A stretch of DNA of 64,000 nt from Macrostomum lignano. Its lineage: Eukaryota. The notes under the pieces were generated by a model. It was given only the letters and a program-made list of their open reading frames with translations. It did no database searches and was not told the origin of the DNA. A program made the position numbers and the translations under genes. This document shows positions 11,501-29,735 of the stretch, piece after piece. The stretch covers positions 62,001 through 126,000 of the forward strand of contig NIVC01001286.1 in assembly GCA_002269645.1 (NCBI GenBank), in the 5' to 3' direction. Within the stretch, counting starts at the first letter, position 1. Each line of letters begins with the position of its first letter.

Positions 11501-12965
11501 TATTGATATTCATTAACCTTTTCGTTTCGAAAATTCAGAAAATCTTCTGAAAAAAAATGCTGAAAAATAAATAACGTCTACCTCCCTAGAAGCCTAAAAG
11601 CATGAATAGAGCGTCGGACTCACGACAAGAAGGCCGTAGGTTCGATTCCTGCTAAATGGGTGCCAGCATTAGCTGGAGTAATTGAGGATGTGTGTGGCGA
11701 TCCCCCAGTCCTTGGACTGAACAGCCGTACGCAGCCTTCAGATGCGCTGCGCAATAGCTGCGGCTGAGCTGTCGGCTGCACATCTGGCCCAATTGGAGCA
11801 GGTGTAATCAATTATTATTTTTTTATTACTATAATTATTTTTTTAATAATTCTTTCAGACCAATGCAAAGAAACGTGCTGGGCTTGGCCCGGGTCGGCAC
11901 TCCGTGCTTGTACGGCAATATCGGCCTGACTTCCCACAGCCAATCCTCCGGTCTTCCTCTGCTATTCCGTCAAGCTGTGTTGGTGACCGCGCACGAATTT
12001 GGTCACAACATGGGCAGCATGCACGATCCGCTCGGAGATTTAAAGTGCTCGCCAGATCCGGCCCACGGTGGCAAATTCCTGATGCACGAAAAAGCGGTTC
12101 AGGGATTTCACAAGAATAATGAGAGATTTTCACCCTGCAGCATTAGTGCCATGGCTGAAGTTATTGAGGTGGGACGAATTCGTGTGCTCTGATTTTGTCT
12201 AAGGAATCCCAAGGAGAACCCCGTTTGAGAAATCCCCAGTAGAATCCCCATTAGGGAAACCCCGAGATGGAAATCCCGAGGAGAATCCGACTTGGGGAGT
12301 CCCGAGGAGAATCCGGCTTGGTAAATCCTGGGGAGATTTCGGCTTGGGGAGTCCCGAGAAGAATCCGGCTTAAGGAATCCCGAGAAGAATCCGGCTTGGA
12401 GAATCCCGAGGAGAATTCGGCTTTGGGAATCCTGCGAAGAATCTTGCTTCGGCAATTATGAGTAGAGTCCCACGTGGAGAATCCTGAGGAGTATCCAACT
12501 TAAGGAATCCTGAAGAATTCATTTGTCTGCTGAATCCCATGCCAGTCTCATATTTTAGCGATTCGAGATGCACTAAATTTGTCATTAGAGAATCCCAATT
12601 CTGAAAGAAACTCCCTCTAGACTACTTTTCTATGAATCATGGGGGTGAACACCCTGTCATGGAAATCCCATGAGGAATCCGCTGAACAGGGATCTGACAA
12701 ACCTTATGAAACTCTGCAGCAAGCGATGAAATACTGTCTGATAAAGACTGGTCCAGTAATGTGCGGCAATTACCGACTCGACCCAGGCGAGGAATGCGAC
12801 GCGGGCATCAGTGGCGACCACTGTTGCCATGGCAACTGCAAATTTAAACCGGGTGCCGTTTGCAGTGATGCAAACTGGCCTTGCTGCAGCAACTGCAAGG
12901 TTTCTATTGCGCTCGCTTTTTTCCATTTCTGTCTGTCTGTCTTTCTGTCTGTCTGTCTGTCTTAG

Positions 12966-13014
<49 letters not shown>

Positions 13015-13803
13015 GCCTGTCTGTGTCTATTTGTCTGTCTATCTGCAATTGTCTATTGCCCTGCCTCACAAGCCCCGCTGCCCCGCCCCAGGTCGCCTCC
13101 AAGGGCACCATCTGCCTGCCAGAGTCACCCCTGCGGCCCTGCCGCGGTCCGTCCCGCTGCACTGGCTCCAGAGTCGACTGCCCGTCGCCGTCGCCACTGG
13201 CACCCGACGGCTCCGTGTGCAACAGCGGCATCGGCAAATGCCTGACCGGCGTCTGCGTGTCGGCCTGCTATCCCAACCTCGAATGCGCCTGCCCGGAGCC
13301 TCAGCACTCCTGCTTGCTTTGCTGTCGACGCGAGAATGGGGCAGATCAGAGCTGCTACCCGCTTGAACTACACGGCGGTAGAGTTAACCTGCCCGTTGAT
13401 TGGCCGTGTCGCTGGCAGGGCACCGGCGAGTTCAGGCGCCGGTGCACAGACAAAGGCACCTGCTCGATGTCATTGTCTACGGGGGCAGGTGATATTGTTC
13501 GAGGAGTAACTGGAGACTCTGAGGACAAGCCAAGTGGAAAGACCGGCGTTAGACTCATGCGGTTGAGCGTCTCGTACAGTGGAGGTCAGTCAGTCAGTCA
13601 GTCAGTCAGTCAGTCAGTCAGTCAGTCAGTCAGTCAGTCAGTCAGTCAGTCAGTCAGTCAGTCAGTCAGTCAGTCAGTCAGTCAGTCAGTCAGTCAGTCA
13701 GTCAGTCAGTCAGTCAGTCAGTCAGTCAGTCAGTCAGTCAGTCAGTCAGTCAGTCAGTCAGTCAGTCAGTCAGTCAGTCAGTCAGTCAGTCAGTCAGTCA
13801 GTC

Positions 13804-13835
<32 letters not shown>

Positions 13836-14284
13836 AGTCAGTCAGTCAGTCAGTCAGTCAGTCAGTCAGTCAGTCAGTCAGTCAGTCAGTCAGTCAGTCA
13901 GTCAGTCAGTCAGTTGCCTTCTTACTAAAGTCAGCCAGTCAGTAAAAATAGTAAAAATTTCATTTTATACAATATATTGCAGGCTCATTCGCGTCAAACA
14001 ACATCGTGTTTATTACAATAACAGTTACTCTCTTCATCTATGTCCCGTTGTGCTTGATTTTGCAGTACCGGGTAAGTTGATGCATCCGTAGTTATGTTTC
14101 GATTCCAGCTAATGTTTATATGGCATAATAAAAACTAGAATTTCTCAGGAGCCTGCCAAGAAATGACGGTCTTATAATTGTCTATTTTTTCAATTTCTTG
14201 CAGGACAAACTTGCCACTCAAGCCAGCAACGAGGATGTCCCGGATGAAGCCGTGATTTCCGATGTCACTCACGAAAAGGCTTAG
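8510..14284 (+). CDS. ADAM17: ADAM17/TACE-like metalloprotease-disintegrin
   Basis: Exons about 8510-8560 (first exon uncertain), 8616/8632-8743, 8825-8973, 9071-9162, 9248-9321, 9423-9923, 11859-12168, 12720-12899, 13092-13584, 13983-14071, 14204-14284; phases are consistent. Contains prodomain, Cys switch (PGAC), furin-like RSIR, zinc motif HEFGHNMGSMHD plus Met-turn, disintegrin CGNYRLDPGEECD, Cys-rich domain, and TM NNIVFITITVTLFIYVPLCLIL followed by DK, matching the ADAM17 pattern. Confidence 0.88.
10030..11330 (-). mobile_element. Possible LTR-derived insertion(s) in ADAM17 intron
   Basis: Two diverged related blocks (10600-10660 and 11238-11305: CTCAAAAC.GGCTC..ATTTATA...TATTGAAGGC) read as TATA-containing LTR-like segments on -. 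No ORF; boundaries not established. Confidence 0.3.
11592..11830 (+). mobile_element. SINE family A copy with internal deletion of the CORE-like part
   Basis: B box GGTTCGATTCC joins directly to AAATGGGTGCCAGC; the remainder aligns with 1512-1700; AT-rich tail. Confidence 0.8.
12195..12545 (+). repeat. Degenerate GAATCCCGAGGAGAATCC-type minisatellite in ADAM17 intron
   Basis: Repeated GGAATCCCGAGGAGAATCC variants. Confidence 0.75.
12928..13045 (+). repeat. (TCTG)n microsatellite
   Basis: Directly visible. Confidence 0.95.
13585..13914 (+). repeat. (GTCA)n microsatellite beginning at the splice donor
   Basis: About 82 units; the first GTCAGT is the inferred donor of exon 13092-13584. Confidence 0.95.
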
Positions 14285-14943: not shown

Positions 14944-17153
14944 ATGGAAGGAAAAGAGCGATTCACTGACCAGAGCCGAGCCCTGTCAGCTGCCATGAGG
15001 ACTGCGGGCTTCAAGTCCTCAAATGCAGCAGCTCAGAGCGGAGTAGCCTTGGCTCTTGAAGACTTGCTGAGGTTGCTGCTCAAGTCCCAAGATTCCTTAT
15101 TCGTGTTCGGCAGCTTCTGCGACGGCTGGGGCAGCTGCTTGAGCAAAATTGACGGCAGCATCGACTCAGACTCGGATATTGACATCACATTCGTGCTGAA
15201 GTCGAACTCGGTTCACATTACAGCTGATTGCAGTGCCTCGGAGACGAGTCAGTGCTTGGAAGGCTGCATGGTGGCTGAGTACGAGGACGGGCACGTGTCT
15301 TATCAGTCTAAAGGTGGGTCCAAGAAACGATCATTATAATTCTTTCCTGCAATGACACAAACGGTTTAGTGATGATGAGGGAGTGTTTAGAATGTGGTGC
15401 TGTGCGCCTATCCATGGGAGCCCTCACCTGCACCCTGACCTATTGGAAAGCGGCGTCCCCAGTTAGAGCTCATGTGTCAAACTGAGTTACAGCATTTTAA
15501 CACATGAAATGCGTCTCCTGGGACACCAAGAAAGGGAATTACGCTCGTAGATGGAATTTTACGACGCTTCTAGCCGCTTCTAGTTACAATTTAGTACGCT
15601 GTGAATCTCGTATTTTAGAAAGTACGCCAAGCTTACCTCTCGGGGGCGATGACCTACGCTTGTCGGATATCGACATTATTCCTGCTCGGCACTGCTGCAG
15701 CTATCCCCGCATCGAGCTGCTGTCGCCCGGCTACAGGTCCCACATTTCGACACAGATTTTGGAAGCCATCCGAACCGAGGTTCTCCAAGTGCCGCGGTGT
15801 CATGCCGTATCTGCGTCGCCTCCCGGACTAGAGGGCAGTCGGATGAGGGTGAGCACTACTCTGTTGGAGAGAATCGTCATGCACAACCTCTCCACAGTCC
15901 AAGGACAGTTGTTTGTGCTGCTCAAGTTCTTCATCAAGAGACACATCAGCTCTAAAGTGAGCGGTCTGAAGACGTACATGGCCAAGAACCTGCTGTTCTA
16001 CATGCTTGACGAGACGCCTGTCGAAGACTGGAGACCAGAAAACTTGTTGTCACTGTTGAAGCAGTCGCTGGAGATGCTGGTAGCTATGATGGAGAGCTTT
16101 GATAACGAAGAGATGAGCGATCCAACTCAAGCTGCTGCCGCAGACCGAAGACTCGAAGCCGTGTGCATGAGACACTTCTTCTTGCGCGATGCCGTCGTGT
16201 ACCTGAAGAAGGACCACGCAGACAAAAGGTCAATCGTTACTGAGACCAAAACCGCGATCGATGACATTCAGAAGATCGCTCAGGTCTTTGAAGCCGGTCT
16301 GACCAAAAACAGCGTCAGAGTTGTTCATCTTCACATTGCTCTTCAGCCTCTGATATACTTTGCTGACGTGATGCAATTTAGCAAGGGCGAGATGAACTTC
16401 AAGTGTAAAGAGATCTTCGGTATCGTGTGGGAGATTCAATCCCTGATGCACAGAGAGGCTACACCGATTCAGTGTCAGCCTGTGGCACCTGAAGACTTTG
16501 CACGGGTGCTGCAAAAAATCAGCGAGCTCGAGGGCTGTCATGAGGTAGTGAAGAAGTGTCTGACCATGATGGCTCACTACAAAGTCGGAATGCCGATAGG
16601 AGAGTCACGTGACCAGATTTTCGATGAAGAGTTCGGCGGCGTTCTGTGTCCGGAAGGAGACTCGACGCTGTCCGTGAAAGAAGGCAAAGCAGCGGTGATG
16701 AAGTTGCTGCAACGCTGCGACTCGCTCGGCATCGAGGTCTGCCATGATCGGATCTGCGCAGTGCGGTCGCTGCAGACAGAAATTTGGCAACTGTTTCAGG
16801 TGTTGTCCACATTTCTGAAAAACTGCAGAAGAAGTAGTTTATCCACCGACACTGCTCTACATGTGCTAGATTTCGCATCAGCAGCTCTACTCGCTACAAA
16901 TTTTCCTTTTCCGGTAATCAGTTCTTCTAAACCAGCTTTATTTAATCCGTCAGGAGGTTTAGGAATTTAATTATTTAATTATTTATTTTAACTTCAGGTG
17001 TTTAGAACTGAGGGCGATGGCTGGCGTTCTAGTGAAGTGAATTTCGCGCGGAATATCCTCATGATATTTTGCGAAGTTGTCGGTACCGAAGATTGTCCAG
17101 CCCTCAGAGACTGGTCAGATGACGAAGAGGAGGAAGCACTACAGTCCCAGTAA
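14944..17153 (+). CDS. Mab-21/cGAS-like nucleotidyltransferase (cGLR-like), copy 1 (about 606 aa)
   Basis: Exons 14944-15313, 15619-16913, 16998-17153 (last junction inferred from GTAATC donor and TTCAG acceptor). Pol-beta NTase signature FGSFCDGWG...DSDID, third acidic residue in SDIDIIPA, and Mab-21 helical-domain motifs CHAV, RVSTTLLER, LFVLLK, LKTYMAKNLLFY, W.PENL, MRHFFL. Confidence 0.82.
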
Positions 17154-17726
17154 TGTCAAACGTAGGCTTGATTCCATATCTCAATTTTTATAATTCGTAT
17201 GTGTTATACACTCGTGTTTCATTTTTTTGTTTTACTTTTTCAGACTGACAAAAAGTGACAACAATCATTGATGCTTTTGAATGAATTCACTGAAACTTGG
17301 GTGATCAACTTGGAAAATGGGAGAGGCTCAATACAATCTGATTTGTACTCGTATTTAGATTTATTAACAATACATAAAGATATTTTCAGATAGCCTTTTT
17401 TATGTCTGGGAGTACGCGGGCCTATAAAGCTTACTTGATAATTGAGTTAATTGGATGAATCAAGACATTTGTGATATTTACGACGATGTGTCTTCCACAT
17501 GTTGTTAGCCACCTCTTGTTACTCAGTAAATTCCTATATTTTATAAAGTTCAGCTTTGCAATCTCAAGAATGTTTAGTTCTGTTCCTTGTAAACAGTTTT
17601 TTTAATACTTCAATGTTTAAAGCTTATTTGCTAATTGCAAATTTATATAGTGTAGACGATAAAATAAAGAAATAAGTATAGTTACCCATTTCGTTCAAAT
17701 TGGTTTTGGTTTTGGTCATGTTCAAA

Positions 17727-19490
17727 CTGATCACCCATGTGTCTGACTGTTCACCCATGTGTCTGACTGATTACCCATGTCTCTGACTGTTCACCCATGT
17801 GTCTGACTGATTACCATGTCTCTGACTGTTCACCCATGTCTCTGACTGTTCACCCATGTGTCTGACTGATTACCATGTCTCTGACTGTTCACCCATGTGT
17901 CTGACTGTTCATCCATGTGTCTGACTGATTACCAATGTCTCTGACTGTTCACCCGTGTCTGACTGTTCACCCATGTGTCTGACTGATTACCCATGTCTCT
18001 GACTGTTCACCCATGTGTCTGACTGATTACCATGTCTCTGACTGTTCACCCATGTGTCTGACTGTTCATCCATGTGTCTGACTGATTACCAATGTCTCTG
18101 ACTGTTCACCCATGTGTCTGACTGTTCACCCATGTGTCTGACTGATTACCCATGTCTCTGACTGTTCACCCATGTGTCTGACTGTTCACCCATGTGTCTG
18201 ACTGTTCACCTATGTGTCTGACTGTTCACCCATGTGTCTGACTGTTCACCCATGTGTCTGACTGTTCACCCATGTGTCTGTCTCATTGCCCATGAGTTTG
18301 ACTGTTCACCCATGTGTCTGACTGTTCACCCATGTGTCTGACTGTTTACCCATGTGTCTGTCTCATTGCCCATGAGTTTGACTGTTCACCCATGTGTCTG
18401 ACTGTTCACCCATGTGTCTGACTGATTATCCATGTCTCTGACTGTTCACCCATGTGTCTGACTGTTCACCAATGTGTCTGACTGTTCACCCATGTGTCTG
18501 TCTCATTGCCCAAGTGTCTGACTGTTCACCCATGTGTCTGACTGTTCACCCATGTGTCTGTCTCATTGCCCATGAGTTTGACTGTTCACCCATGTGTCTG
18601 ACTGTTCACCCATGTGTCTGACTGTTCACCCATTTGTCTGTCTCATTGCCCATGAGTTTGACTGTTCACCCATGTGTCTGACTGTTCACCCATGTGTCTG
18701 ACTGTTCACCCATGTGTCTGACTGTTCACCCATGTGTCTGACTGATTACCCATGTCTCTGACTGTTCACCCATGTGTCTGACTGTTCACCAATGTGTCTG
18801 ACTGTTCACCCATGTGTCTGTCTCATTGCCCAAGTGTCTGACTGTTCACCCATGTGTCTGGCTGATCACCCATGTGTCTGCCTGTTCACCCATGTGTCTG
18901 TCTCATTGCCCATGAGTTTGACTGTTCACCCATGTGTCTGACTGTTCACCAATGTGTCTGTCTCATTGCCCAAGTGTCTGACTGTTCACCCATGTGTCTG
19001 ACTGTTCACCCATGTGTCTGTCTCATTGCCCATGAGTTTGACTGTTCACCCATGTGTCTGTCTTATTGCCCATGTGTTTGACTGTTCACCCATGTGTCTG
19101 TCTCATTGCCCATGTGTCTGACTGTTCACCCATGTGCCTGCCTCATTGCCCATGTGTCTGACTGTTCACCCATGTGTCTTACTGTTCACCCATGTGTCTG
19201 ACTGTTCACGCATGTGTCTGACTGATTACCCATGTCTCTGACTGTTCACCCATGTGTCTGACTGTTCACCCATGTGTCTGACTGTTCACCCATGTGTCTG
19301 ACTGTTCACCCATGTGTCTGTCTCATTGCCCATGTGTTTGACTGTTCACCCATGTGTCTGTCTCATTGCCTATGTGTCTGACTGTTCACCCATGTGTCTG
19401 ACTGATCATCCATGTGTCTGACTGACCACCCATGTGCCTGACTGATTACCCATGTGTCTGACTGATCACCCATGTGTCTGACTGATTACC
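17727..19490 (+). repeat. 20-bp minisatellite (GACTGTTCACCCATGTGTCT)n with variant units
   Basis: About 1.75 kb array; variant units ...TCTCATTGCC... and ...GATTACC... Confidence 0.96.
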
Positions 19491-20234
19491 TACAATTCGC
19501 ACAGGAGTTTTGCTACGTATTTATCTGTAACTTACGTATTTTTCTGAACACATGTACGAGCTGCTGAACACACGCCAAAGATAACTAACAAAGGCTCGAC
19601 CAACCTCGGAACCCAAGACTCTGTGAGAGCAGCTGCTAGTTGAATTACTTGATTGAGTTGCAGGCGGCATCGTCCGGCGGATGAAGCGTGGAAGCGGGCG
19701 AGACCGCTCATTACGCTAGCCCATGACGACCAATAACTTCCATAACTTCCAACAAAGTATTTTCGCAAGTCCCTTCGGCTACTCGTTGAAGCTATTTACT
19801 GGAAGTGAAAAAGGTAAACTTACTGCAGAACACAGGCAAAGAGCTGCAATACACTGCTCCCCAAACCAAGCGGCAGGTTCCTCAAGAGAAAAAATCCCTC
19901 CCTGCGTGAGGACCCAAGGACGCAAGGGAAACCGTTCCTAGCAAGCGAACATCAGCACGGAGTTACACTGACACATTAGAGGGTGGGTTTGTGGGTCCTC
20001 GGCGCCAATAAATCTGTTCAGGAAGGCCCTTCAAAGTGCGCCTTGCAAGATAAAAAACAAGAGACAGAGTCCCAGACTCTTGGACTGTTTCCAGTCAAAA
20101 AGGGTCAAATGTGAGCATCGCTGGCTGGGGAAAGAGGCCATCCCAGACTAATACTGCACAGATACATCACGCCATTTTTTGCAGGACCCGAGTTTTTAGA
20201 CGTAATCGACCTCGGCAGCCGCTAGTCGACTCAA

Positions 20235-20770
20235 TGGATGTTTGAGACGTTTCCTGGCTATCATCATCATTAGGTCGGTAAACGGTTATGGCTGTTGGTG
20301 TATCCATTTCTCGACAGCGAATCTCCAACTCCTTCGATCCAAGGCAATCCTGCTCCGCTGCACCATCCACTCTCCACTCCACTCCATCAGCTAGACTGCC
20401 TGTCCAATCACCTTGTGGCCTGCCTCTGTCCCTTCGCCCCTCACCACCAACTTCAACCACGGCCTTCAGCGCTCCATCACTTCTCGCACCATGCCTGAAG
20501 GAGCGGAATTTCCTTCCACAAGGCCTCCATCATAGATCTGTAAGTCTTCATCTCGAAAGATCTCGGTTGCTTTTCATACTTCTTCTCCATTGCCCAGCAC
20601 TCACACGCATAGAGAAGATTTGCCATGACTACCAATATCATTAGCAGCATTTTATTTTTCATGTGGATGTTTTTTGCTTTCCAGATGTTGTCCACGCAGT
20701 TTTACGAGTGCAATTTTAGCTCTTCCAGTCAGTATCAGAATCTCCTTGTCTGACTTTCCCTGCATTGTTT
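20235..20770 (-). mobile_element. 5'-truncated RTE-clade LINE fragment
   Basis: Translates on - to IWKAKNIHMKNK..LV...LLYACECW...FEMKTYR and GRRDRGRP...W; (TGA)n near the 3' end; flanked by direct repeat CTAGTCGACTCAA at 20222-20234 and 20771-20783. Confidence 0.8.
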
Positions 20771-21013
20771 CTAGTCGACTCAAGTGTAGATTGGCTGGCC
20801 AATCGCTGTTAGCGGGGCCAGAGGGGGGGTTGTCGTCGCCCGTGTTTGGGGGTGCTTGGTCCTGGGGTGGGTGTCTGTGGGGCCTTTTTAGTCCCGCGCG
20901 TTGTGCCCACCTCAGCCTATCTCTCCTCGCCAGCTTGCGTGCGTTTTTTTGCGATTTCTGGCTAGCCCAACTTAATTATTCAACTTACTCTGGGTACTAT
21001 GAGTTTGCGTAGG

Positions 21014-22047
21014 ATGACTGTAAATCAGCTACGTGAAGAATTGAGTGATAGGGGCCTGAGCACGCACGGTTACAAGAAAGACCTGGTCAGCAGACTCTCC
21101 ACTGCGATGAGCCAGAGCGAAGCAGCTAGTCGGCGGAACAAGCGGCGTCAAACTCCGCGGAGACCGACAGCGAAGGTCGGCGGCAGCAGCAGCAACAACG
21201 GCTGGAGGCAGGGGAGGCGCTGGACCTATCAGAGCTCCGGCGGAAGATAGCTAGCCTGGAATCGGAGACGGCAGCAATGCGCCAGCAGCTGGAAGGCCGA
21301 TTTAGACCAGGTGAGGTGGACCAACAGCTTCTTAATGAGCCCTCTGATTGTAGCAGCGACATGAATATCCCGAGTATACTCAGAGGTCCCGGGTTCGAGA
21401 CCAGGCTCGAGCCCTCAGTAGCTCAACTAGGGCTACGGGCGGCACCACTCGTCGTTGCGGATTTCTGCGGTTGCGACCCTCGGACGGCGTCGGCGAGTCG
21501 TAGGGAAAAGGTGCTGCATCCAACCGCCAATCAGCCTAAACCCGAATCGCTGGGAATCGGTCAGTGGATAGTCGGCAACGCGCGCATCCTCGACGCCTTG
21601 ATCTCTAGGGGACAGCTCGACCTGGAAGGCGTTCGGCAGTACTTGCAGTACAATGTACAGATCGGTGAGCTGGTCGAGGCAGGTTACGACACCACCAGGA
21701 TCATGCGGTTCGACGACGCATTCAGAAGAGAGCAGCAGGCGGGCATGCAAGACTGGGCGCGACCGAGTTTCTCGCTGGTGGCACGGCACCTCATTGCCCC
21801 GCAGCAGACTCCACAACATGCCCGTTCTCGCACGGACAGGAAGATTCCGGTGATTCAAGGAGCGCCCGTCTGCCTCAAGTTCAACACCCGTGGTGGCTAC
21901 AAGTTCCAGAATTGCAAGTACACTCATGCGTGCCGAGACGCAACACGCGGCAAAAAACAAATAGCCGCGGCTCCAGTGGCCGCAAGTTTTAATCCCAAGT
22001 TTTTACTCCATTCGCGACATCAATTTCAATCCGAGTGGCTCCCTTGA
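21014..22047 (+). pseudogene. DIRS gag-like ORF1: N-terminal SAP domain and C-terminal Cys/His finger, frameshifted
   Basis: MTVNQLREELSDRGLSTHGYKKDLVSRL fits the SAP/HeH pattern; CLKFNTRGG..FQNCKYTHAC is a degenerate C-x-C-x-H finger typical of these gags. Confidence 0.7.
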
Positions 22048-23520
22048 CGCAAATGCCTGGGCGAAGGAGCTGAACGGCGACCCCGACGGGCCTTTTTTAA
22101 TTGACGGAGTCCAAAACGGCTTCGCGCTCACTACTGAGACAGATTTTAAACCTTCCGAAGTTGAGAACTACTCGTCCGCCATTGAGTACAAGACGTTGGT
22201 TGAAGAGCAATTGCAGCGTGAGATCGCCAGCGGGCGGTATGTGTCAATCAGCCGACGTCCGTGCAAGATCTCCGCGCTTGGTGCCATCCCGAAAGAGGAC
22301 GGTGGAGTCCGTATCATCCACGACTGCAGTCGTCCGGAAGGCTATGCGGTCAACGACCACTTTATCGCAGACCACAAGATTAAGTTTGAGACGGTTAGCG
22401 GCCTCTGCTCACAACTCAAGCCCGGTGACTTCACGGCCAAGATCGATCTCAAGGAGGAGTATCGCTCAGTGGGTGTTCATCCTTCTTCTCTCGACGCTCT
22501 GGGCATCAAATGGCAATTTAGCGGCGACAGCGAGCCTACCTACCTGGTCGACACCCGGCTGAGCTTCGGCGCTGCGGCCTCGGTGTACCATTTCAAAAGG
22601 CTGTCTAATTAGGCGGTGGTGCGCATGATGCAACGGCGCGTGTTCACCTGCGTTGGCTACCTCGACGACTTCGCTGTGGCGGCGAGCACCTACGAGGCCT
22701 GTGTCGAGGCTTACGAGAGCTTGAGGAGCCTGGCGACGAGCCTCGGTTTCACCATCAACGAAAAGAAGTCTAGCGGGCCGTCGCGGCGCACGGTTTTCAT
22801 GGGCGTCCTGATTGACACAGAGTCGGGGATGCTGAGCATCCCACCGGCCAAGCTCAGTGCACTCAAAGACGCACTTGGGAGCTGCTTGCATCGACGCGGT
22901 GCCATCAGCAAGCGCGACCTTCAGCGGATCTGCGGCAAGCTGTCCTGGGTGAGCAGCGTGACCAGGAAAGGCCGAGCTTCCATCCGCCCTCTACTGATGC
23001 TGGCGAGCCGGGCGACTAGACCTGGTGACAAATTGCGGCTGACCCCGCACCTCACCGAGTCGCTGCACTGGTGGAGGAGAAGCCTTCAGTCCGTTGGCTG
23101 CGCGCCCATATAGCCTCGCTACTCTCGAAGAATCGTCATCGAGACTGACGCCTGCAACTCGGGTGGTGCCTGCATTGTTCGGGAAGCCAATAAGTCCGAC
23201 TGGCTCTACATCAACTGGAAGAACGACGCTGGTGGCCTTTTTGCTTCGGCCCACATCAACGTAAAGGAGACCATCACGCCTGTCCTCAGCATCCTCGCGG
23301 CCCCTGGGCCGCTTCGCCGGTGTGGACATCGTCGTGTACAGCGACAGCTCGGCGGCTGTCGGTGCGCTGAACAAGCTCAGCTCGCCATGTAACGACGTCA
23401 ACCGGCTCCTGCACACGCTGTCGCTTGCCTGCGACGCGTGGGGTCTGCGGCTGCGGGCCTTTCACGTTCCAGGCGCCTTCCAGGTCCTGCTGGACCCGGC
23501 CTCTCGCCTTGCTTCTAGAA
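22044..23520 (+). pseudogene. DIRS reverse transcriptase and RNase H, disrupted
   Basis: RIIHDCSRP, KIDLKEEYRSV, RLSFG, YLDDF; RNase H motifs IETDAC, HINVKE, YSDSSAA, HVPG..DPASR. Confidence 0.85.
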
Positions 23521-23565
23521 CTTTTTTCTCCGCTTCTACCGTAGCCTGCATGATTTGGCTGCTGA

Positions 23566-24597
23566 CTCCTGCTGCATCTCGCGCCGCGCGCTCTGCTCTG
23601 CCTCCGCCTCCCTTTTGCATTTACAGGTCCGGCGCCTCCTCCCTCCCACCTACCCGGGCCGCTTCTTCGCTTCCTCGCCGACGCCTGGGCTCCTAGTACC
23701 AGGGCATCGTACGCTTCAAACCTCGAACAGTGGCAGCGCTTCTGCAACCTCGAAGGTGTTCAGCCACCAGCGGCGTCCCCGGTGCACCTGGTCGAGTATG
23801 TGCGACGCCTGGCTAAGCGCGGCGTGGCACCCGGTAGCCTCGGTGGACACCTGGCGGCCATCAGCTGGAGCTTCAAGCTGGCGCAACTCCCCGACATCAC
23901 CAAGTCCGGCCTGATCGATCTGGCAGTTAAGAGCGCCAAACGGACAAGCGGCCATTCAGTCAAGCAGAAAGACCTCATCACCCCGGCGGTTCTGTTTTCA
24001 CTGGCAAATCAGGTGAACCCAAGAGACCCTGCGGACGCCGCCTTTTGGGCCGCCGTGCTCTGCTGCTTCTGGGCGCTTCTCAGGAAAGCAAGTGTCTGCG
24101 GGCACCACTCCATTCTCGTCGGCGACACTCAGGCCGATAGTCAGTGGTGGAGACTCCGAGTTCGACAGTCGAAGACCAACCAATGCGGACAAGACTACCA
24201 GGAGGCGGTGCTGCCAGCGCTCCGAAGCCACCCACTTTGTCCTGTCCAAGCCCTGCGGTGGCATTTTCAGACTAACAAGCTGCTGTCTGCACCGGCGCTC
24301 ACTTGGCTGTTTTGCGTCCACATGGCCGGAAGCTGGTGCCCGATGACATCGCGTCAATTCAACCGCCGCCTCGCTTGGGCTCTGGCAGATGCGGGTTGTG
24401 CGGCGACAGCTTTCTCAGGCCACTCTCTACGACGGGGTGGCGTCTGTCTGGCGTTCGACAGCGACCTCGACGTGGAGCAGATCAAGCGGCTGGGCGGCTG
24501 GCGCAGCGGCGCCGTTTCACGTTACCTGCCGCAGTCGGGGGGGTTGCCTCCGTCTCCTGCGCCCAAGGTCAAGCGTGTGCTGTCGGCACCTCTCTAG
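23566..24597 (+). CDS. DIRS tyrosine recombinase ORF (uninterrupted, no in-frame ATG at its start)
   Basis: Open from 23566. N-terminal WAPSTRASY...W.RFC; catalytic LLRKAS, SKT, HSLRRGG, GGWRS, SRY. Confidence 0.85.
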   Translation, partial: LLLHLAPRALLCLRLPFAFTGPAPPPSHLPGPLLRFLADAWAPSTRASYASNLEQWQRFCNLEGVQPPAASPVHLVEYVRRLAKRGVAPGSLGGHLAAISWSFKLAQLPDITKSGLIDLAVKSAKRTSGHSVKQKDLITPAVLFSLANQVNPRDPADAAFWAAVLCCFWALLRKASVCGHHSILVGDTQADSQWWRLRVRQSKTNQCGQDYQEAVLPALRSHPLCPVQALRWHFQTNKLLSAPALTWLFCVHMAGSWCPMTSRQFNRRLAWALADAGCAATAFSGHSLRRGGVCLAFDSDLDVEQIKRLGGWRSGAVSRYLPQSGGLPPSPAPKVKRVLSAPL

Positions 24598-24879
24598 CGC
24601 TCGCCTGACTCCCCCGTCGCCGTGTACCCTACTTTTTTAATCCCTTTTTCGGGTTTTTTGGGATGTTTTGCTCGTCTCGTAAGTTGCCCATACAGGGCGG
24701 TAGGATGTGTTGCTCGTGCTATCCAATTGTTGCCTTTGTTCTCTCCCTCCGGCCGTTCCGCTAATGGATGTTTGGGACGTTCTTCGACGATGTATATCCT
24801 TGAAGGCAGGTTGACACTAATTCCTTTCGACTCAAAACTCTTCGCCGATCAAGAGCCAATATCCAGCGTCGATCTGTTT

Positions 24880-24970
24880 CGTGAATTCTTCAAGGCACGG
24901 AGAGTGTACATGCCAGACGATTAGAAAGTCAGGGCCGCTGTTCACCTTGAGTGAGCGTGTGTGTGAGTTG
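24880..24970 (+). mobile_element. SINE family B/C shared central domain copy
   Basis: GAGAGTGTACATGCCAGACGATTAGAAAGTCAGGGCCGCTG matches 4008-4046 and 2123-2141. Confidence 0.6.
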
Positions 24971-25095
24971 TCGGCTTGTATACAGTATCCGGGCTTGCTT
25001 CTGCTCGTAGCTGCCGACGCTGGAAGCGACGTGCGATGATTTTGCTTATGACGTTGCGGCAGGGTGACCTTAGCTAGTCCTCCTTGCAATTATAT

Positions 25096-25521
25096 TATTG
25101 GTTTTTGCGAGCTATCTCAGCCAAGGAGCAAGCAAACTCATCCATCCCATAGATTTCAATACGACGAAGGAGGTTGTTTTAACCATAGACTATCACGTTT
25201 TTTCAACCAAACTCATCCAACGGGCGAGCAATCTCAGCCATAGCTTGTCTGCCCATTCATTTCCTCTTCCCTTCTTTCTTTCCTCCTCCTCCGATGGCTC
25301 AGTTGCGACAAACATCCAACTCCGACAGAGAGAAGCTAATCAAGTAAATTAAATTTTTCGCTTAATAAACAAGCTATGGCTGAGATTGCTCGCCCGTTGG
25401 ATGAGTTTGGTTGAAAAAACGTTATAGTCTATGGTTCAAACCACCTCCTTCGTCGTATTGAAATCTATGGGATGGATGAGTTTGCTTGCTCCTTGGCTGA
25501 GATAGCTCGCAAAAACCAATA
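25096..25521. mobile_element. MITE / foldback element with about 153-bp terminal inverted repeats, TA flanks
   Basis: 25096-25248 is the reverse complement of 25369-25521 with a few mismatches; 120-bp spacer; TA at both ends is compatible with Tc1/mariner-type insertion. Confidence 0.85.
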
Positions 25522-25751
25522 TTAATATTAAGGGCAATCTCTTCGGAATGGGAGTCTAATACCCAGTCCTTTGGTACTAAAATTTCAGAATACACGTATT
25601 GAACAGATAGAAGTAGAAGTAGGTTTCAAGCATATACTCGTAAGACACATGTACGACGTATTAGGCAACAATGATGATGTTTAATCGTCACCTAATAAAA
25701 GTATTTAAGCACATTTGAAATAAGAACTTGCGACTTCACTTACTCGTAGAC

Positions 25752-26067
25752 CATGGGTCAGCAAACTCCGGGCTGTAAAGTCTCGCTGTCCGGTCTTCGG
25801 GTCCTTTGAAGCTTCACGATAGCAATCCGACGCGCTTAAGGTTAGTCTCTTCTTAGTTCTCTCCTCTGTCTTTTGTCTCCTCTTTCAGCTTTTTACTCAT
25901 CTCTTATCTCATCGCATTTCTCATCTCGCCTCTCCTCTCTTCTGTCATCTCCTCCATCTTTTATCTCCTCCATTACCTCTCCTTTCCACTCTCTCATCTG
26001 ACCCGCAGTAATGATCTATTGTAGATTCTTTATCCGGCTCTTAAAGTAAAAATTTTGTCGACGTCTG
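25752..26067. mobile_element. Possible old hAT-type MITE
   Basis: Left CATGGGTCAGCAAACT and right AATTTTGTCGACGTCTG resemble degenerate CAGGGGTCGGCAAACT-type TIRs; flanks TCGTAGAC / ATGTAGAT are a poor 8-bp TSD. Confidence 0.4.
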
Positions 26068-26094
26068 ATGTAGATGATCAAACAAAGTTCTGAC

Positions 26095-26189
26095 TAGGGA
26101 CAACTTAAACTAGTTTAGCAGGTTTAGTTTAGTTTAGTTTAGCTGAACTAGTTTAGTTCGGCAACTTAAACTAGTTTAAGTTGTCCCTG
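26095..26189. mobile_element. 95-bp hAT-type MITE
   Basis: TIR AGGGACAACTTAAACTAGTTT (26096-26116 / 26168-26188); 8-bp flanks GTTCTGAC / CTTCTGAC (one mismatch). Confidence 0.7.
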
Positions 26190-26554
26190 CTTCTGACTTG
26201 ATTCTGTTTCAAATATACTTAATAATTCATGAATATCTAGAAAATACATTTCGTTTCCTTCTGCAACAAATACCCATTACAAAGCTTGCAATGATCAACG
26301 ATACTTCCTTTGTGTAATTGTGTGGCAGAGCTACTCCCTGTATTTTAAACGAAATTCTACCTTATACGCATACTTATACACTTTTATACGCATGTAAAAG
26401 TTATCTAGTATGACTGGTATGAATATCGTCAACTAGTGTGTAGAATATAGAAAACTAATGTCCATCAACGCATGCCAGTTGTTGTCGAACTCGTATTAAA
26501 CAATCAACCAGAAGCTTACCTGCCTGTCCTCTTTGTTTATGGGGCTTCTTTCAT

Positions 26555-26705
26555 CACTCAATCAGCATCATCAGCATCACCATCATCATCATCAGCATCT
26601 ATCATCTCAGCATTATTAACATCAGCATCATCATCATTATCATTATCTCAGCATCATCATCATCATCAGCATCATTTGCTTCATTCGAAATTCGAACAGC
26701 CATCA
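26555..26705 (+). repeat. Degenerate (CAT/CAG)n trinucleotide tract
   Basis: Directly visible. Confidence 0.85.
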
Positions 26706-26967
26706 GTATATTTGGATCAAAATTTTGAAACTAAAGAATTAAAGAAGCATCAACTTGAATAACTACAGGCAAAATGGCCTCTTTATAAAGCATAGTGTTC
26801 GGTTTGCATAGTGTACGAGCGTATTGTTATATAGTACCGCCTCTAAGGTACCTAGATATGTTTAAAAAGCTACCGAGAAAATCTCACAGAGAAATAGCAA
26901 ATCTAGGTGCTAGCAAAATTTCAATGCGACATACCGAAAGGCTGCGTTTTCTGTGTTCGGTCTTGAA

Positions 26968-29237
26968 ATGACCGATGAAGAGCGATTCACTGACCAGAGC
27001 CGAGCCCTGTCAGCTGCCATGAGGACTGCGGGCTTCAAGTCTTCAAATGCAGCAGCTCAGAGCGGAGTAGCCTTGGCTCTTGAAGACTTGCTGAGGTTGC
27101 TTCTCAAGTCCCAAGATACCTTCTTCGTGTTCGGCAGCTTCTGCGACGGCTGGGGCAGCTGCTTGAGCAAAATTGACGGCAGCATCGACTCAGACTCGGA
27201 TATTGACATCACATTCGTGCTGAAGTCGAACTCGGTTCACATTCCAGCTGACTGCAGTGCCTCGGAGACGAGCAATTGTTTGAAAGGCTGCAAGGTGGCT
27301 GACTACGAGGACGGGCACGTGTGTTATGCATCAAAAGGTTAGCCGGAACTTTCAACGATCCGAGTTTTGAAACCCTTAGCTTGATCGGCTTGATAAATAG
27401 GTTCGGCAGTTTAGTATGTAAGAGTCAGGGAATTCCTGAAAAGGGGACAAATGGGCCCTAAAGACTGGCTTTTATTTACCAACTGTAAAGAAAATAACAA
27501 GATATACGTTTCTGAATTAGACAGACAGATATTAAAGATATTAAACAGACAGAAGTAGTAAGTGGGGCGTCCAGATAATAAAAGCAGGGGTGGAGTGCGT
27601 GACTAAGGAAAGAGGCGAGATTGAGGAGCCAATCAGAATGAAGCAACTTAGCAAGGCAGAGAGAGAAGAATAACAAGATTGAACTAGACAGAGAGGCAGA
27701 GAAAACATAGTAAACAGAGACAAGTGAAGGTGAACTAAGAAACGACTAAGTCACCAATAATGCGACACACGTTAAATGTCCTATGAAATTACGAAGCATC
27801 CGACTGCATGAGAAAGACAACAAAAACAGAGCGGTTCACAAACCACAGCCGAGCGCTTAGGCCAGTGGTCTAGTATGCTGCTATATGGCCTACAAACAAA
27901 ACCACACTAATTGTGTGAACTTTTCAGAACCATCGCCCTGCCTTTCATTCAACGGGGCAACTTTTCGACTGCCGGAAATTGAAGCCATCTCTGCTCGGCA
28001 CTGCTGCAGCTATCCGCGCATCGAGCTGCTGTCGCCCGGCTACAGGTCCCACATTTCGACACAGACTTTGGAAGCCATCCGAACCGAGGTTCTCCAAGTG
28101 CCGCGGTGTCATGCCGTATCCGCGTCGCCTCCCGGACTAGAGGGCAGTCGGATGAGGGTGAGCACTACTCTGTTGGAGAGAATCGTCATGCACAACCTCT
28201 CCACAGTCCAAGGACAGTTGTTTGTGCTGCTCAAGTTCTTCATCAAGAGACACATCAGCTCTAAAGTGAGCGGTCTGAAGACGTACATGGCCAAGAACCT
28301 GCTGTTCTACATGCTTGACGAGACGCCCGTCGAAGACTGGAGACCAGAAAACTTGTTGTCACTGTTGAAGCAGTCGCTGGAGATGCTGGTAGCTATGATG
28401 GAGAGCTTTGATAACGAAGAGGTGAGCGATCCAACTCAAGCTGCTGCCGCAGACCGAAGACTCGAAGCCGTGTGCATGAGACACTTCTTCTTGCGCGATG
28501 CCGTCGTGTACCTGAAGAAGGACCACGCAGACAAGAGGTCAATCGTTACTGAGACCAAAACCGCGATCGATGACATTCAGAAGATCGCTCAGGTCTTTGA
28601 AGCCGGTCTGACCAAAAACAGCGTCAGAGTTGTTCATCTGCACAATGCTCTTCTGCCTCTGATATACTTTGCTGACGTGATGCAGCTTAGCAAGGGCCAG
28701 CTGAACTTCCATTTCAAAGAGATCTTCAATATCGTGTGGGAGATCCAAACCCTGATGCACAGAGAAGCTACACCGAGTCAGTGTCAGCCTGTGGCACCTG
28801 AAGACTTTGCACGGGTGCTGCACAAAATCAGCGAGCTCGAGGGCTGTCATGAGGTAGTGAAGAAGTGTCTGACCATGATGGCTTACTACAAAGTCGGAAT
28901 GCCGATAGGAGAGTCACGTGACCAGATTTGCGATGAAGAGTTCGGCGGCGTTCTGTGTCCGGAAGGAGACTCGACGCTGTCCGTGAAAGAAGGCAAAGCA
29001 GCGGTGATGAAGTTGCTGCAACGCTGCGACTCGCTTGGCATCGAGGTCTGCCATGATCGGATCTGCGCAGTGCGGTCGCTGCAGACAGAAATAAGGGCGC
29101 TCGTAAACTTTCTCGCTAAGTTTATTGGTAGTTCTGAAGGCAACGGAGGTTTTGAAAATCGAAGAAAAATTATAGTCTCATTATTCCATTTTTTCGTGAG
29201 TGACAAACGTTTTCAAAATGACTGCATACTCTTGTAA
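26968..29237 (+). CDS. Mab-21/cGAS-like nucleotidyltransferase (cGLR-like), copy 2 (about 559 aa)
   Basis: Exons 26968-27337 and 27928-29237 (phase 1 intron at the same position as copy 1). Same NTase and Mab-21 motifs; colinear with copy 1 without indels at offset 12309 over 27928-29092. Confidence 0.82.
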
Positions 29238-29385
29238 TGAAATATTTAATGACGACCCTGCACACTTCGCTAAAAGGATCACTGCAACTTATTTTAGGCC
29301 AAATTTCGCTTAAAATACAACTAGCTAGAAAACAATTTTTTAACCACTCTTGGTAATAAAGGACTATTTTTGCTCACCTAAAATC

Positions 29386-29735
29386 GGCCGGGGACGTAGC
29401 CCAGTGGTCTGGCGCGGCGCTCTGATGTGCCAGCGGCCCAAGCTCGAATCCAAGTGCAGTCACATTAATTTGGGGCTAAAATTGGAAACTCGGCTTGGTC
29501 TGCTCGTGCAATTAACGCTATTGACGGCCAACCCCCAAGGCACAGTGAAGTGTACATGTCTAACGATAAATAAAGTTAAGGTCGCTGTGTGAGTGTGTGC
29601 CTGCGTGTATGACTGCGTACGTATCCGCGCGCTTGTGTGCCTGCTTAGGGGAGTCGGCGAGATTGGCAGTAATGCCTCTTGCCGGTTGTGCGACAATGTC
29701 GCTTAAAGTGCGCCAGGGTGCACACAGCCTCTTAA
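29386..29735 (+). mobile_element. tRNA-derived SINE family B
   Basis: A-box-like TAGCCCAGTGG, B-box-like GCTCGAATCC; full-length homolog inverted at 58340-58670. Confidence 0.75.

What the first reader, a model, noticed from the sequence alone, without database searches (positions are those of the whole stretch)
15314..29092. Mosaic identity between the cGLR copies: near-identical exon cores, unalignable introns and flanks
Seen: 15684-16330 vs 27993-28639 differ by only 2 amino acids in about 215 codons with a handful of silent changes, and there are no indels over 1.16 kb. Yet the shared-position intron (305 vs 590 bp), the 5' flanks, the first 21 codons of exon 2 and everything after 16783/29092 do not align. 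A plain recent segmental duplication would have copied introns too. Inference: old paralogs homogenised by exon-limited gene conversion or recombination among family members, shuffling variable modules around a constant enzyme core, as in other diversified immune-receptor families.
Basis: partly seen in the sequence, partly recalled or inferred. Interest (0 to 1): 0.75.

Follow-up and report, generated by a model that had tools for sequence, protein, structure and literature searches.

The report
Gene conversion between tandem cGLR-like paralogs
Two neighbouring copies of a flatworm (Macrostomum lignano) cGAS-like enzyme gene are old duplicates whose coding sequence has been partly overwritten from one another by gene conversion, a real but ordinary process in tandem gene families.

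Summary
Two same-strand, intron-containing Mab21/cGAS-like genes lie 12.3 kb apart: A at 14944-17153 and B at 26968-29237. They share two ungapped blocks, 14954-15315 (95%) and 15682-16783 (97.6%). Intron 1, the 5' flanks and the 3' flanks score no better than shuffled sequence.

Three young tracts have dS of about 0.03. They alternate with older patches: dS 0.34 at the end of exon 1, saturated in the first 21 codons of exon 2, and 0.16 in an internal patch at 16331-16468. The 21 codons still align in register (30/63 identities, mostly at codon position 2), so they are old homologues and not unrelated sequence. Intron 1 has the same position and phase as in a paralog that is 39% identical.

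Best explanation: old tandem paralogs, repeatedly and partially homogenised by interlocus gene conversion whose tracts stop where homology runs out.

"Variable modules around a constant enzyme core" is not supported. The most divergent segment lies inside the nucleotidyltransferase core and carries the third catalytic residue (Asp in A, Glu in B).

This is a new instance of a known process, of moderate-to-low interest. Read-level validation was not possible.

The parts
14944..15313 (+). Gene A exon 1 (codons 1-123 plus 1 nt). It holds the spine helices, the GS motif (G56 S57) and the catalytic D78/D80.
   Evidence: Sequence reading, translation, family alignment. The gene model matches UniRef A0A1I8H961 = P0002.
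15314..15618 (+). Gene A intron 1: 305 bp, GT..AG, phase 1.
   Evidence: No significant similarity to intron B. No repeat hits.
15619..16913 (+). Gene A exon 2.
   Evidence: The C-terminal junction ...NFPFP|VFRTEG... is confirmed by P0001 and P0002.
16914..16997 (+). Gene A intron 2: 84 bp, phase 0. Its position is within 1-2 aligned residues of intron 2 of the distant paralog P0009.
16998..17153 (+). Gene A exon 3, with stop codon TAA at 17151-17153.
26968..27337 (+). Gene B exon 1.
27338..27927 (+). Gene B intron 1: 590 bp, GT..AG, phase 1, in the same codon as in A.
27569..27750 (+). Interspersed-repeat fragment inside intron B.
   Evidence: 84% identity to L001 12427-12603, which lies in intron 2 of the P0009 gene on another M. 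lignano contig.
27928..29237 (+). Gene B exon 2, read through to the first stop. Homology to A ends at 29092. The last 145 bp have non-coding-like composition (GC 0.36). No counterpart of A's intron 2 or exon 3 was found.
14954..15219 (+). Young tract 1 (matches 26978-27243): 4 mismatches in 266 bp, dS 0.034.
15220..15313 (+). Older patch at the end of exon 1 (matches 27244-27337): 14 mismatches in 94 bp, dS 0.34, with mismatch density rising towards the intron.
15619..15681 (+). Oldest coding segment (matches 27928-27990): 30/63 identity in register, pS 0.81. It contains the third catalytic acid (D142 in A, E142 in B).
15682..16330 (+). Young tract 2 (matches 27991-28639): 6 mismatches in 649 bp, dS 0.034.
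16331..16468 (+). Intermediate-age patch (matches 28640-28777): 17 mismatches in 138 bp, dS 0.16, dN 0.12. Nine of the ten amino-acid changes are B-specific when compared with P0001.
16469..16783 (+). Young tract 3 (matches 28778-29092): 4 mismatches in 315 bp, dS 0.028. It ends abruptly at 16783/29092.
17726..19484 (.). 20-bp satellite (about 88 copies) in the spacer between A and B.
20999..24597 (+). Degenerate tyrosine-recombinase (DIRS-like) retroelement in the spacer. The ends given are approximate.
   Evidence: RVT_1 hit at 22616-23113 and Phage_integrase hit at 23782-24597, both below Pfam cut-offs, with reading frames broken into several ORFs.
29426..29729 (.). SINE-like interspersed repeat about 190 bp downstream of the gene B stop.
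   Evidence: Copies at window 58349-58632 and at L001 12665-12968. ARAGORN finds no tRNA.

Best explanation
Genes A and B are two old tandem, same-strand paralogs of a Macrostomum lignano Mab21/cGAS-like nucleotidyltransferase family. Their coding sequences have been partly and repeatedly homogenised by interlocus (non-allelic) gene conversion.

Proposed mechanism: a break in one copy is repaired using the copy 12.3 kb away as template. Each event copies a few hundred bp to about 1 kb. A tract can only start and end where the two copies are still similar, so tracts stop short of the intron and the flanks, which have no homology left. Successive events with different end points leave three age classes:
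- dS about 0.03: 14954-15219, 15682-16330, 16469-16783.
- dS about 0.16-0.34: 15220-15313 and 16331-16468.
- Never or anciently converted: intron 1, the first 21 codons of exon 2, and both flanks.

Shown: the mosaic, its statistical significance, its presence at synonymous sites, the shared ancestral gene structure, and the cGAS-like fold with catalytic motifs.

Inferred: the repair mechanism, the number, order and direction of events, and whether the unconverted segments are kept distinct by selection or simply by lack of homology.
For: (1) There are only two ungapped similarity blocks. The introns and 1-kb flanks score at shuffle level.

(2) Nei-Gojobori dS by segment is 0.034 / 0.335 / saturated (pS 0.81) / 0.034 / 0.164 / 0.028. 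The heterogeneity at synonymous sites is significant by Fisher tests: p = 6e-13, 0.006 and 0.02.

(3) Scan and run-length permutation tests give p < 1e-4.

(4) Age of the gene pair. The start codon is at the same offset, 10 nt before the homology starts. Intron 1 is in the same codon and phase in A, B and the 39%-identical paralog P0009. The 63-nt segment is conserved at codon position 2 only. In that segment A-B identity (0.38) is no higher than A against distant family members (maximum 0.35), whereas in core1 it is 0.99 against 0.64.

(5) It is not ordinary rate variation. The distribution of A/B amino-acid differences over segments departs from that of another close family pair, P0003/P0004 (chi-square 54.7, p = 1.5e-10). 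Core3 is as fast-evolving in the family as the patch, yet it is 97% identical between A and B against 78% for the patch.

(6) At least six old/young switches are seen along 1.5 kb of coding sequence. A single unequal crossover would give one.

(7) Gene A's combination of segments is reproduced by an independently produced database protein (P0002), apart from two single-base indels.
Against: - Only two genomic copies could be compared at DNA level. No orthologues and no DNA of other close paralogs were retrievable. Segment-wise phylogenetic incongruence, the classical proof, was therefore not obtained.
- The three young tracts have the same dS. This would also fit one recent whole-gene event followed by replacement of the intervening pieces.
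- The 3' limit at 16783/29092 may be a structural breakpoint and not a tract end. B lacks the family's intron 2 and exon 3, and continues in AT-rich sequence.
- M. lignano is a neopolyploid that is hard to assemble (PMC10733133). Reads were not available to verify the two loci.
Confidence: 0.68

Rival explanations
1. A recent whole-gene tandem duplication (dS about 0.03) was followed by overwriting of parts of one copy from other, more divergent family members (third-party conversion or template switching) or by rearrangement. The parts overwritten would be the 5' flank, the end of exon 1 with intron 1 and the start of exon 2, the internal patch, and the 3' tail.
For: - The three young tracts have indistinguishable dS: 0.034, 0.034 and 0.028.
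- In the patch, nine of the ten amino-acid differences are B-specific compared with the third copy P0001.
- B's tail has no detectable similarity to A's and has a non-coding composition.
Against: - It needs at least four separate replacements, including both flanks, while keeping the start codon, the intron position and phase, and the exact 63-nt length of the replaced exon piece.
- No candidate donor exists among the 15 family proteins found. B's segment 124-144 is at most 25% identical to any of them.
- It is still gene conversion among paralogs, differing only in order and donor.
Confidence: 0.15
2. Assembly or polishing artefact. The near-identical stretches, or the tandem arrangement itself, would come from collapse, chimeric joining or cross-paralog consensus correction in a neopolyploid genome.
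For: - M. lignano has three homeologous subgenomes and is described as difficult to assemble (PMC10733133).
- The database model P0002 equals gene A apart from two compensating single-base indels. One of them is a hybrid of the A and B/P0001 states at codon 170, which looks like a consensus error in that other assembly.
Against: - The two loci have entirely different introns, flanks and neighbouring repeats, and 45 fixed differences inside the blocks. Haplotypes or homeologs placed in tandem would have alignable introns.
- Polishing cannot turn saturated divergence into 99% identity over 650 bp while leaving a 12% patch in the middle.
- Gene A's full arrangement is seen independently in P0002.
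Confidence: 0.07
3. No exchange at all: old paralogs whose similar parts are held by purifying selection, including selection on synonymous sites or an overlapping element, while the rest drifted.
For: - The similar parts are coding.
- Core1 is the most conserved part of the family.
Against: - dS of 0.03 sits beside saturated synonymous sites in the same exon.
- Core3 is poorly conserved in the family (median 21% identity to other members) yet 97% identical between A and B.
- The same core between distant paralogs is only 73% identical at DNA level.
- The antisense ORFs are short and were not followed up; there is no evidence that they are functional.
Confidence: 0.03
4. Selection-maintained cassette system. 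Conversion homogenises a scaffold, while specificity-determining segments (residues 93-144, 362-407 and the tail) are kept different, and are recombined among many family members to create receptor diversity.
For: - The divergent segments coincide with the least conserved parts of the family.
- Segment 93-144 lies between the catalytic strands of a cGAS-like fold.
- The family is expanded in this species, with at least 15 members, some carrying ankyrin repeats.
Against: - dN/dS is below 1 in all segments.
- Only three close copies are known, and the third shows no new combination.
- Lack of homology alone explains why the intron-adjacent and terminal segments escape conversion.
- B's tail looks like read-through and not like a module.
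Confidence: 0.07

Closest known systems
Interlocus (non-allelic) gene conversion and concerted evolution in tandem duplicated genes. Textbook cases, from my own knowledge: human gamma-globin HBG1/HBG2, RHD/RHCE, opsin and MHC genes.
   Same: - Two same-orientation copies lie a few kb apart.
- Sharply bounded stretches of near-identity extend to synonymous sites and are embedded in anciently diverged sequence.
- The tracts are a few hundred bp to about 1 kb long.
- Tract ends fall where homology decays.
   Different: - Here the introns have no residual similarity, so conversion is confined to coding DNA.
- The tracts are interrupted by two intermediate-age patches.
- Neither the direction of conversion nor the donors can be named.
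- No population or cross-species data were available.
cGAS-like receptors (cGLRs) as defined by Li et al. 2023 (PMC9980059).
   Same: - The predicted fold matches cGAS, MB21D2 and MAB21L1.
- The G[S/G] motif is present (G56-S57).
- The [E/D]h[E/D] X50-90 [E/D] triad is present: D78, D80 and D142 in A, E142 in B, with 61 residues between.
   Different: - Sequence similarity to known cGLRs is marginal: Pfam Mab-21_C scores 20.7 bits, below its 24.1 cut-off, and the PDB profile search gives E = 0.04-0.2.
- There is an additional C-terminal extension of about 250 residues with no match.
- No ligand, product or STING partner is known.
[quoted passage not shown]
Mab21-like developmental proteins (MAB21L1/L2).
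   Same: The overall fold is the same (5eog and 5eom hits). UniRef names the relatives 'Mab-21 domain-containing'.
   Different: - The genes here keep a full acidic catalytic triad.
- They belong to a lineage-specific expanded family and are not a single conserved orthologue.

Membership tests
cGLR (criteria of Li et al. 2023, PMC9980059) | Predicted structural homology to cGAS | tested here: met
   AlphaFold2 model of gene A (pLDDT 69.6, pTM 0.72). The top 46 Foldseek PDB hits are all cGAS, MB21D2 or MAB21L1 (best E = 6e-5, target TM about 0.53). Model and match quality are moderate.
cGLR (criteria of Li et al. 2023, PMC9980059) | G[S/G] activation-loop motif | tested here: met
   FGSFCDGWGS. 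S57, G61, W62 and G63 are invariant in the 16-sequence family alignment. The motif is identical in A and B.
cGLR (criteria of Li et al. 2023, PMC9980059) | [E/D]h[E/D] X50-90 [E/D] catalytic triad | tested here: met
   D78-I-D80 are invariant. The third acid is D142 in A and E142 in B, 61 residues downstream. The assignment of the third residue rests on the family alignment and on the DhhPA-like motif, not on a structural superposition.
cGLR (criteria of Li et al. 2023, PMC9980059) | Ligand-activated synthesis of a nucleotide second messenger that signals through STING | not testable with these tools
   Needs biochemistry. No STING search was made.
Pfam Mab-21 family (PF03281 / PF20266) | Score above the curated gathering threshold | tested here: not met
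   Only Mab-21_C (PF20266) is hit, at 20.7 bits against a cut-off of 24.1 (E = 5e-4) for both A and B. There is no PF03281 hit. Several more distant family members do carry a precomputed PF20266 hit.
Interlocus gene conversion between paralogs | Two distinct loci with non-homologous surroundings | tested here: met
   Flanks and introns score at shuffle level. The two loci have different repeats in and around them.
Interlocus gene conversion between paralogs | Segments with significantly lower divergence than neighbouring homologous segments, also at synonymous sites | tested here: met
   dS of 0.03 against 0.16-0.34 and saturated. Permutation and Fisher tests are significant. A control with the relative rates of another family pair gives p = 1.5e-10.
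Interlocus gene conversion between paralogs | Segment-wise phylogenetic incongruence with additional paralogs or orthologues | tested here: inconclusive
   Only one extra close sequence was available (P0001, protein only). The patch, the start of exon 2 (G133 onward) and the tail group A with P0001; in the last part of exon 1 (residues 112-121) P0001 matches B or neither. Core1 and core3 are star-like. No DNA of other copies was retrievable.
Interlocus gene conversion between paralogs | Both copies verified by reads or an independent assembly | tested here: inconclusive
   Gene A is reproduced by P0002 from another annotation or assembly. No B-like protein is present in the 5.8-billion-protein database. 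Reads were not available.

The most novel reading that the evidence does not exclude
This flatworm-specific expansion of cGAS-like enzymes would use conversion as a diversification device. A homogenised scaffold would be combined with a few anciently diverged cassettes that are protected from homogenisation by selection and reassorted among paralogs, homeologs and strains. The cassettes would be the beta-segment between the catalytic strands including the third catalytic acid, a two-helix patch in the C-terminal extension, and the tail. This would give enzymes with different ligand or product specificity, in a phylum reported to have mostly lost cGLR signalling.
Probability: 0.08. Interest if true: 0.6.

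Novelty: new member of a known kind. Interest (0 to 1): 0.3.

Why it matters
If it is confirmed, paralog trees for this family would be misleading unless they are built per segment. The young tracts would also date a recent exchange (dS about 0.03) that is close to the amino-acid divergence from the third copy, P0001. The finding marks two segments for testing functional divergence between neighbouring cGAS-like enzymes: residues 93-144, which include the D142/E142 difference, and residues 362-407. It does not reveal a new mechanism. Partial concerted evolution of tandem paralogs is well known.

Tried and rejected
- DNA of other close copies. The look-up of encoding contigs for P0001, P0002 and the two long window ORFs returned nothing. 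Only the distant paralog P0009 could be fetched (L001). It served for intron positions and repeat identification.
- Introns aligning once insertions are removed. Local alignment finds nothing, with or without the repeat fragment at 27569-27750.
- Homology of the 3' tails. The BLOSUM62 local score equals the shuffle level (p = 0.71). tblastn with A's tail finds no exon-3-like sequence downstream of B. My first impression of a residual 'EGDG/EGNG' match was therefore dropped.
- An alternative acceptor at the conserved CTGCAG (15696-15701). It gives a frame that stops after 45 codons, so it was rejected by reading the sequence.
- My first exon-3 join for gene A (donor at 16800) gave stop codons. 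It was replaced by the donor at 16914, which P0001 and P0002 confirm.
- GC-biased conversion. GC3 is 0.64-0.69 in young tracts, 0.61-0.65 in the intermediate patches and 0.48-0.52 in the 21-codon segment. There are too few sites to conclude.
- Positive selection. dN/dS is below 1 everywhere.
- tRNA origin of the SINE-like repeat. ARAGORN finds none.
- Literature. No paper links cGLRs with gene conversion or with Macrostomum.

Full report
**What the window is.** The sequence is eukaryotic (44% GC, rich in satellites and retroelements). The protein encoded at 14944-17153 finds only Macrostomum lignano proteins, which UniRef names 'Mab-21 domain-containing'. The best hits are 87-90% identical and the rest 37-54%. 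One hit, P0002 (A0A1I8H961), equals gene A once a one-base deletion in a G-run and a one-base insertion at codon 170 are allowed for. The window is therefore M. lignano, a neopolyploid flatworm with three homeologous subgenomes (PMC10733133).

**Gene models.**
- Gene A has exon 1 at 14944-15313, a 305-bp phase-1 intron, exon 2 at 15619-16913, an 84-bp intron, and exon 3 at 16998-17153. The C-terminal join is confirmed by P0001 and P0002.
- Gene B has exon 1 at 26968-27337, a 590-bp intron in the same codon and phase, and exon 2 from 27928 with an open frame to 29237.
- The distant paralog P0009 (39% identity), fetched with its DNA as L001 from GCA_002269645.1, has intron 1 in exactly the same codon and phase. 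Its intron 2 lies within one or two aligned residues of A's. The three-exon structure is therefore ancestral to the family.

**Checking the observation.** Self-BLAST gives only two A/B blocks, both ungapped: 14954-15315 (95.0%) and 15682-16783 (97.55%, 27 mismatches). Local alignment of the introns, of 1 kb upstream and of 1 kb downstream scores no better than shuffled sequence. Three refinements matter.
1. The first 21 codons of exon 2 are the same length in both genes and share 30/63 bases in register (p about 1e-4). Identity is 15/20 at codon position 2 and 5/20 at position 3. This is old, protein-constrained homology with saturated silent sites.
2. The 'core' contains a 138-bp patch (16331-16468) with 17 mismatches, flanked by stretches at about 1%. 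The last 94 bp of exon 1 are 15% divergent, with mismatch density rising towards the intron.
3. Intron B contains a 182-bp interspersed repeat that also occurs in an intron of the P0009 gene. This explains part of the length difference but does not make the introns alignable.

**Is it more than chance or constraint?** Nei-Gojobori estimates by segment:

| Segment | Coordinates (gene A; as set, offset ≤2 nt from the mismatch-based boundaries used elsewhere) | dS |
|---|---|---|
| Exon 1, constant part | 14956-15219 | 0.034 |
| End of exon 1 | 15220-15312 | 0.335 |
| First 21 codons of exon 2 | 15313 + 15619-15680 | saturated (pS 0.81) |
| Core1 | 15681-16331 | 0.034 |
| Patch | 16332-16469 | 0.164 (dN 0.117) |
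| Core3 | 16470-16784 | 0.028 |

Scan permutations give p < 1e-5 and 9e-5. Synonymous-site Fisher tests give 6e-13, 0.006 and 0.02. A Sawyer-type run-length test gives p < 5e-5.

Ordinary rate variation along the protein does not explain the pattern. Core3 is as poorly conserved in the family as the patch, yet it is 97% identical between A and B against 78% for the patch. In residues 124-144 A and B (38% identical) are as far apart as A is from the most distant family members (at most 35%). The distribution of A/B differences over segments departs from that of another close family pair, P0003/P0004 (chi-square 54.7, p = 1.5e-10).

**What it is.** The best-supported reading is two old tandem paralogs that have been partly homogenised by interlocus gene conversion in several events. 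The age of the pair is shown by four things: the conserved start-codon position 10 nt before the homology starts, the shared ancestral intron, the saturated 21-codon segment, and the unalignable intron and flanks. The recent exchange is shown by three tracts with dS of about 0.03.

At least six old/young switches occur along 1.5 kb of coding sequence. This argues for non-crossover conversion and against a single unequal crossover. The intermediate-age patches point either to earlier events with different end points or to a discontinuous tract. Tracts would end where homology becomes too low, which explains why nothing in the intron or the flanks was copied.

Inferred, not shown: the mechanism, the number, order and direction of events, and any role of selection in keeping the divergent segments apart. 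dN/dS is below 1 in every segment.

**The 3' limit.** This boundary needs separate caution. After 29092, B has no detectable similarity to A's tail. It lacks the family's intron 2 and exon 3, and it continues in sequence with non-coding composition (GC 0.36 against about 0.54). It may be a structural truncation of B that conversion simply runs up to. A candidate phase-0 donor exists at 29103, but no downstream exon could be recognised.

**The third copy.** P0001 (A0A1I8HU34) is a further close copy, known only as protein. It agrees with A in the patch, in the start of exon 2 and in the tail. It agrees with B at four positions where A carries singletons (170, 289, 407, 458). This fits ((A,P0001),B) in the old segments and a star in the young ones. 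That is compatible with conversion, but it is not proof of module reshuffling.

**Is it a cGLR?** Sequence evidence is weak. Pfam Mab-21_C scores 20.7 bits, below its 24.1 cut-off. A family profile against PDB sequences finds cGLR1 and cGAS only at E = 0.04-0.2. An AlphaFold2 model of A (pLDDT 69.6, pTM 0.72) does find cGAS, MB21D2 and MAB21L1 as all of its top matches (E = 6e-5, target TM about 0.53).

Li et al. (PMC9980059) used three criteria: structural homology to cGAS, a G[S/G] motif, and an [E/D]h[E/D] X50-90 [E/D] triad. All three are met here by G56-S57, D78, D80 and D142 in A, with E142 in B. I therefore call the genes cGLR-like by those criteria. Activity, ligand and a STING partner are untested. 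The same paper says that most platyhelminths have no cGLRs beyond Mab21-like proteins.

'Old paralogs homogenised by gene conversion' is supported. 'Exon-limited' is true only in the sense that no non-coding DNA was copied; all tract ends but one lie inside exons. 'Variable modules around a constant enzyme core' is not supported. The most divergent segment (residues 93-144) lies between the DxD strand and the strand with the third catalytic acid, inside the nucleotidyltransferase core. The other variable parts are two helices and the tail of a C-terminal extension of about 250 residues that is not part of the cGAS fold.

**Rivals.**
- A recent whole-gene duplication followed by third-party overwriting of at least four pieces is possible. 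It is less economical and has no candidate donor.
- An assembly or polishing artefact cannot be excluded without reads. It is unlikely given completely different introns, flanks and repeats, a 12% patch inside the similar block, and independent support for gene A.
- Constraint alone is contradicted by the synonymous sites.

**Novelty and interest.** Partial concerted evolution of tandem paralogs is textbook biology. I found no paper that links it to cGLRs or to Macrostomum. This is a new instance of a known process, useful mainly as a warning for phylogenies of this family and as a pointer to segments worth swapping in functional tests. Interest is scored at 0.3.

Noticed in passing
window 15642-15646 and 15756-15758: The database protein P0002 (A0A1I8H961) is gene A with one G fewer in the GGGGG run and an extra C at AGA[C]TTTTGG. 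This puts 37 residues out of frame. The second change is a hybrid of the A state (ATT) and the B/P0001 state (ACT) at codon 170, which suggests a consensus error in the assembly behind that model. P0001's odd junction (KLTSRGDD) can be reproduced by reading A's sequence with four Gs from an alternative AG acceptor; only the P0002 reconstruction was computed.
   Followed up: yes
window 15619-15681 vs 27928-27990 (residue 142): The family-conserved third catalytic Asp is Glu in gene B: DIDIIPA in A against EIEAISA in B. This is conservative, but it sits in the most divergent segment.
   Followed up: partly
window 29093-29237: Gene B's reading frame continues for 48 codons in AT-rich sequence (GC 0.36) with no similarity to the family tail. 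B appears 3'-truncated, or it uses an unrecognised downstream exon. A candidate donor is CTC|GTAAAC at 29103, and there is an AATAAA near 29357.
   Followed up: partly
window about 20999-24597: A degenerate retroelement with a reverse-transcriptase fragment (22616-23113) and a tyrosine-recombinase (phage-integrase-like) ORF (23782-24597), i.e. DIRS-like, lies between the two genes. Its frames are broken into several ORFs.
   Followed up: partly
window 17726-19484: A 20-bp satellite (consensus ACTGTTCACCCATGTGTCTG, about 88 copies, 83% matches) starts about 570 bp after gene A's stop.
   Followed up: no
window 1517-1765, 11654-11840, 51050-51288; 29426-29729, 58349-58632; L001 11977-12968: Three interspersed repeat families of the window, including the one in intron B, all occur side by side inside intron 2 of the distant paralog P0009 on another contig. 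The 300-bp family looks SINE-like, but ARAGORN finds no tRNA.
   Followed up: partly
window 43533-45006 and 51880-52248: A satellite with a 21-bp period spans about 1.5 kb, with an inverted partial array about 7 kb downstream at 85-90% identity.
   Followed up: no
window 13585-13914, 12928-13045, 52802-53143: Long tetranucleotide arrays: (GTCA) about 82 copies at 99% purity, and (TCTG) about 30 copies with related arrays near 52.8-53.1 kb and 48.6-49.6 kb. The region 46-50 kb has extreme GC skew (-0.45 to -0.64) and a spurious 895-aa ORF.
   Followed up: no
window 4395-5490 (-) and 56590-57255 (-): Other genes in the window. Two adjacent ORFs match consecutive parts of aminotransferase class I/II (Pfam E = 1e-17 and 9e-21). 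A separate ORF has an APCDD1-type domain (E = 2e-12).
   Followed up: no
proteins P0007, P0011, P0014, P0015: Some members of this M. lignano family carry N-terminal ankyrin repeats fused to the cGAS-like domain. P0015 has His at the third catalytic position.
   Followed up: no
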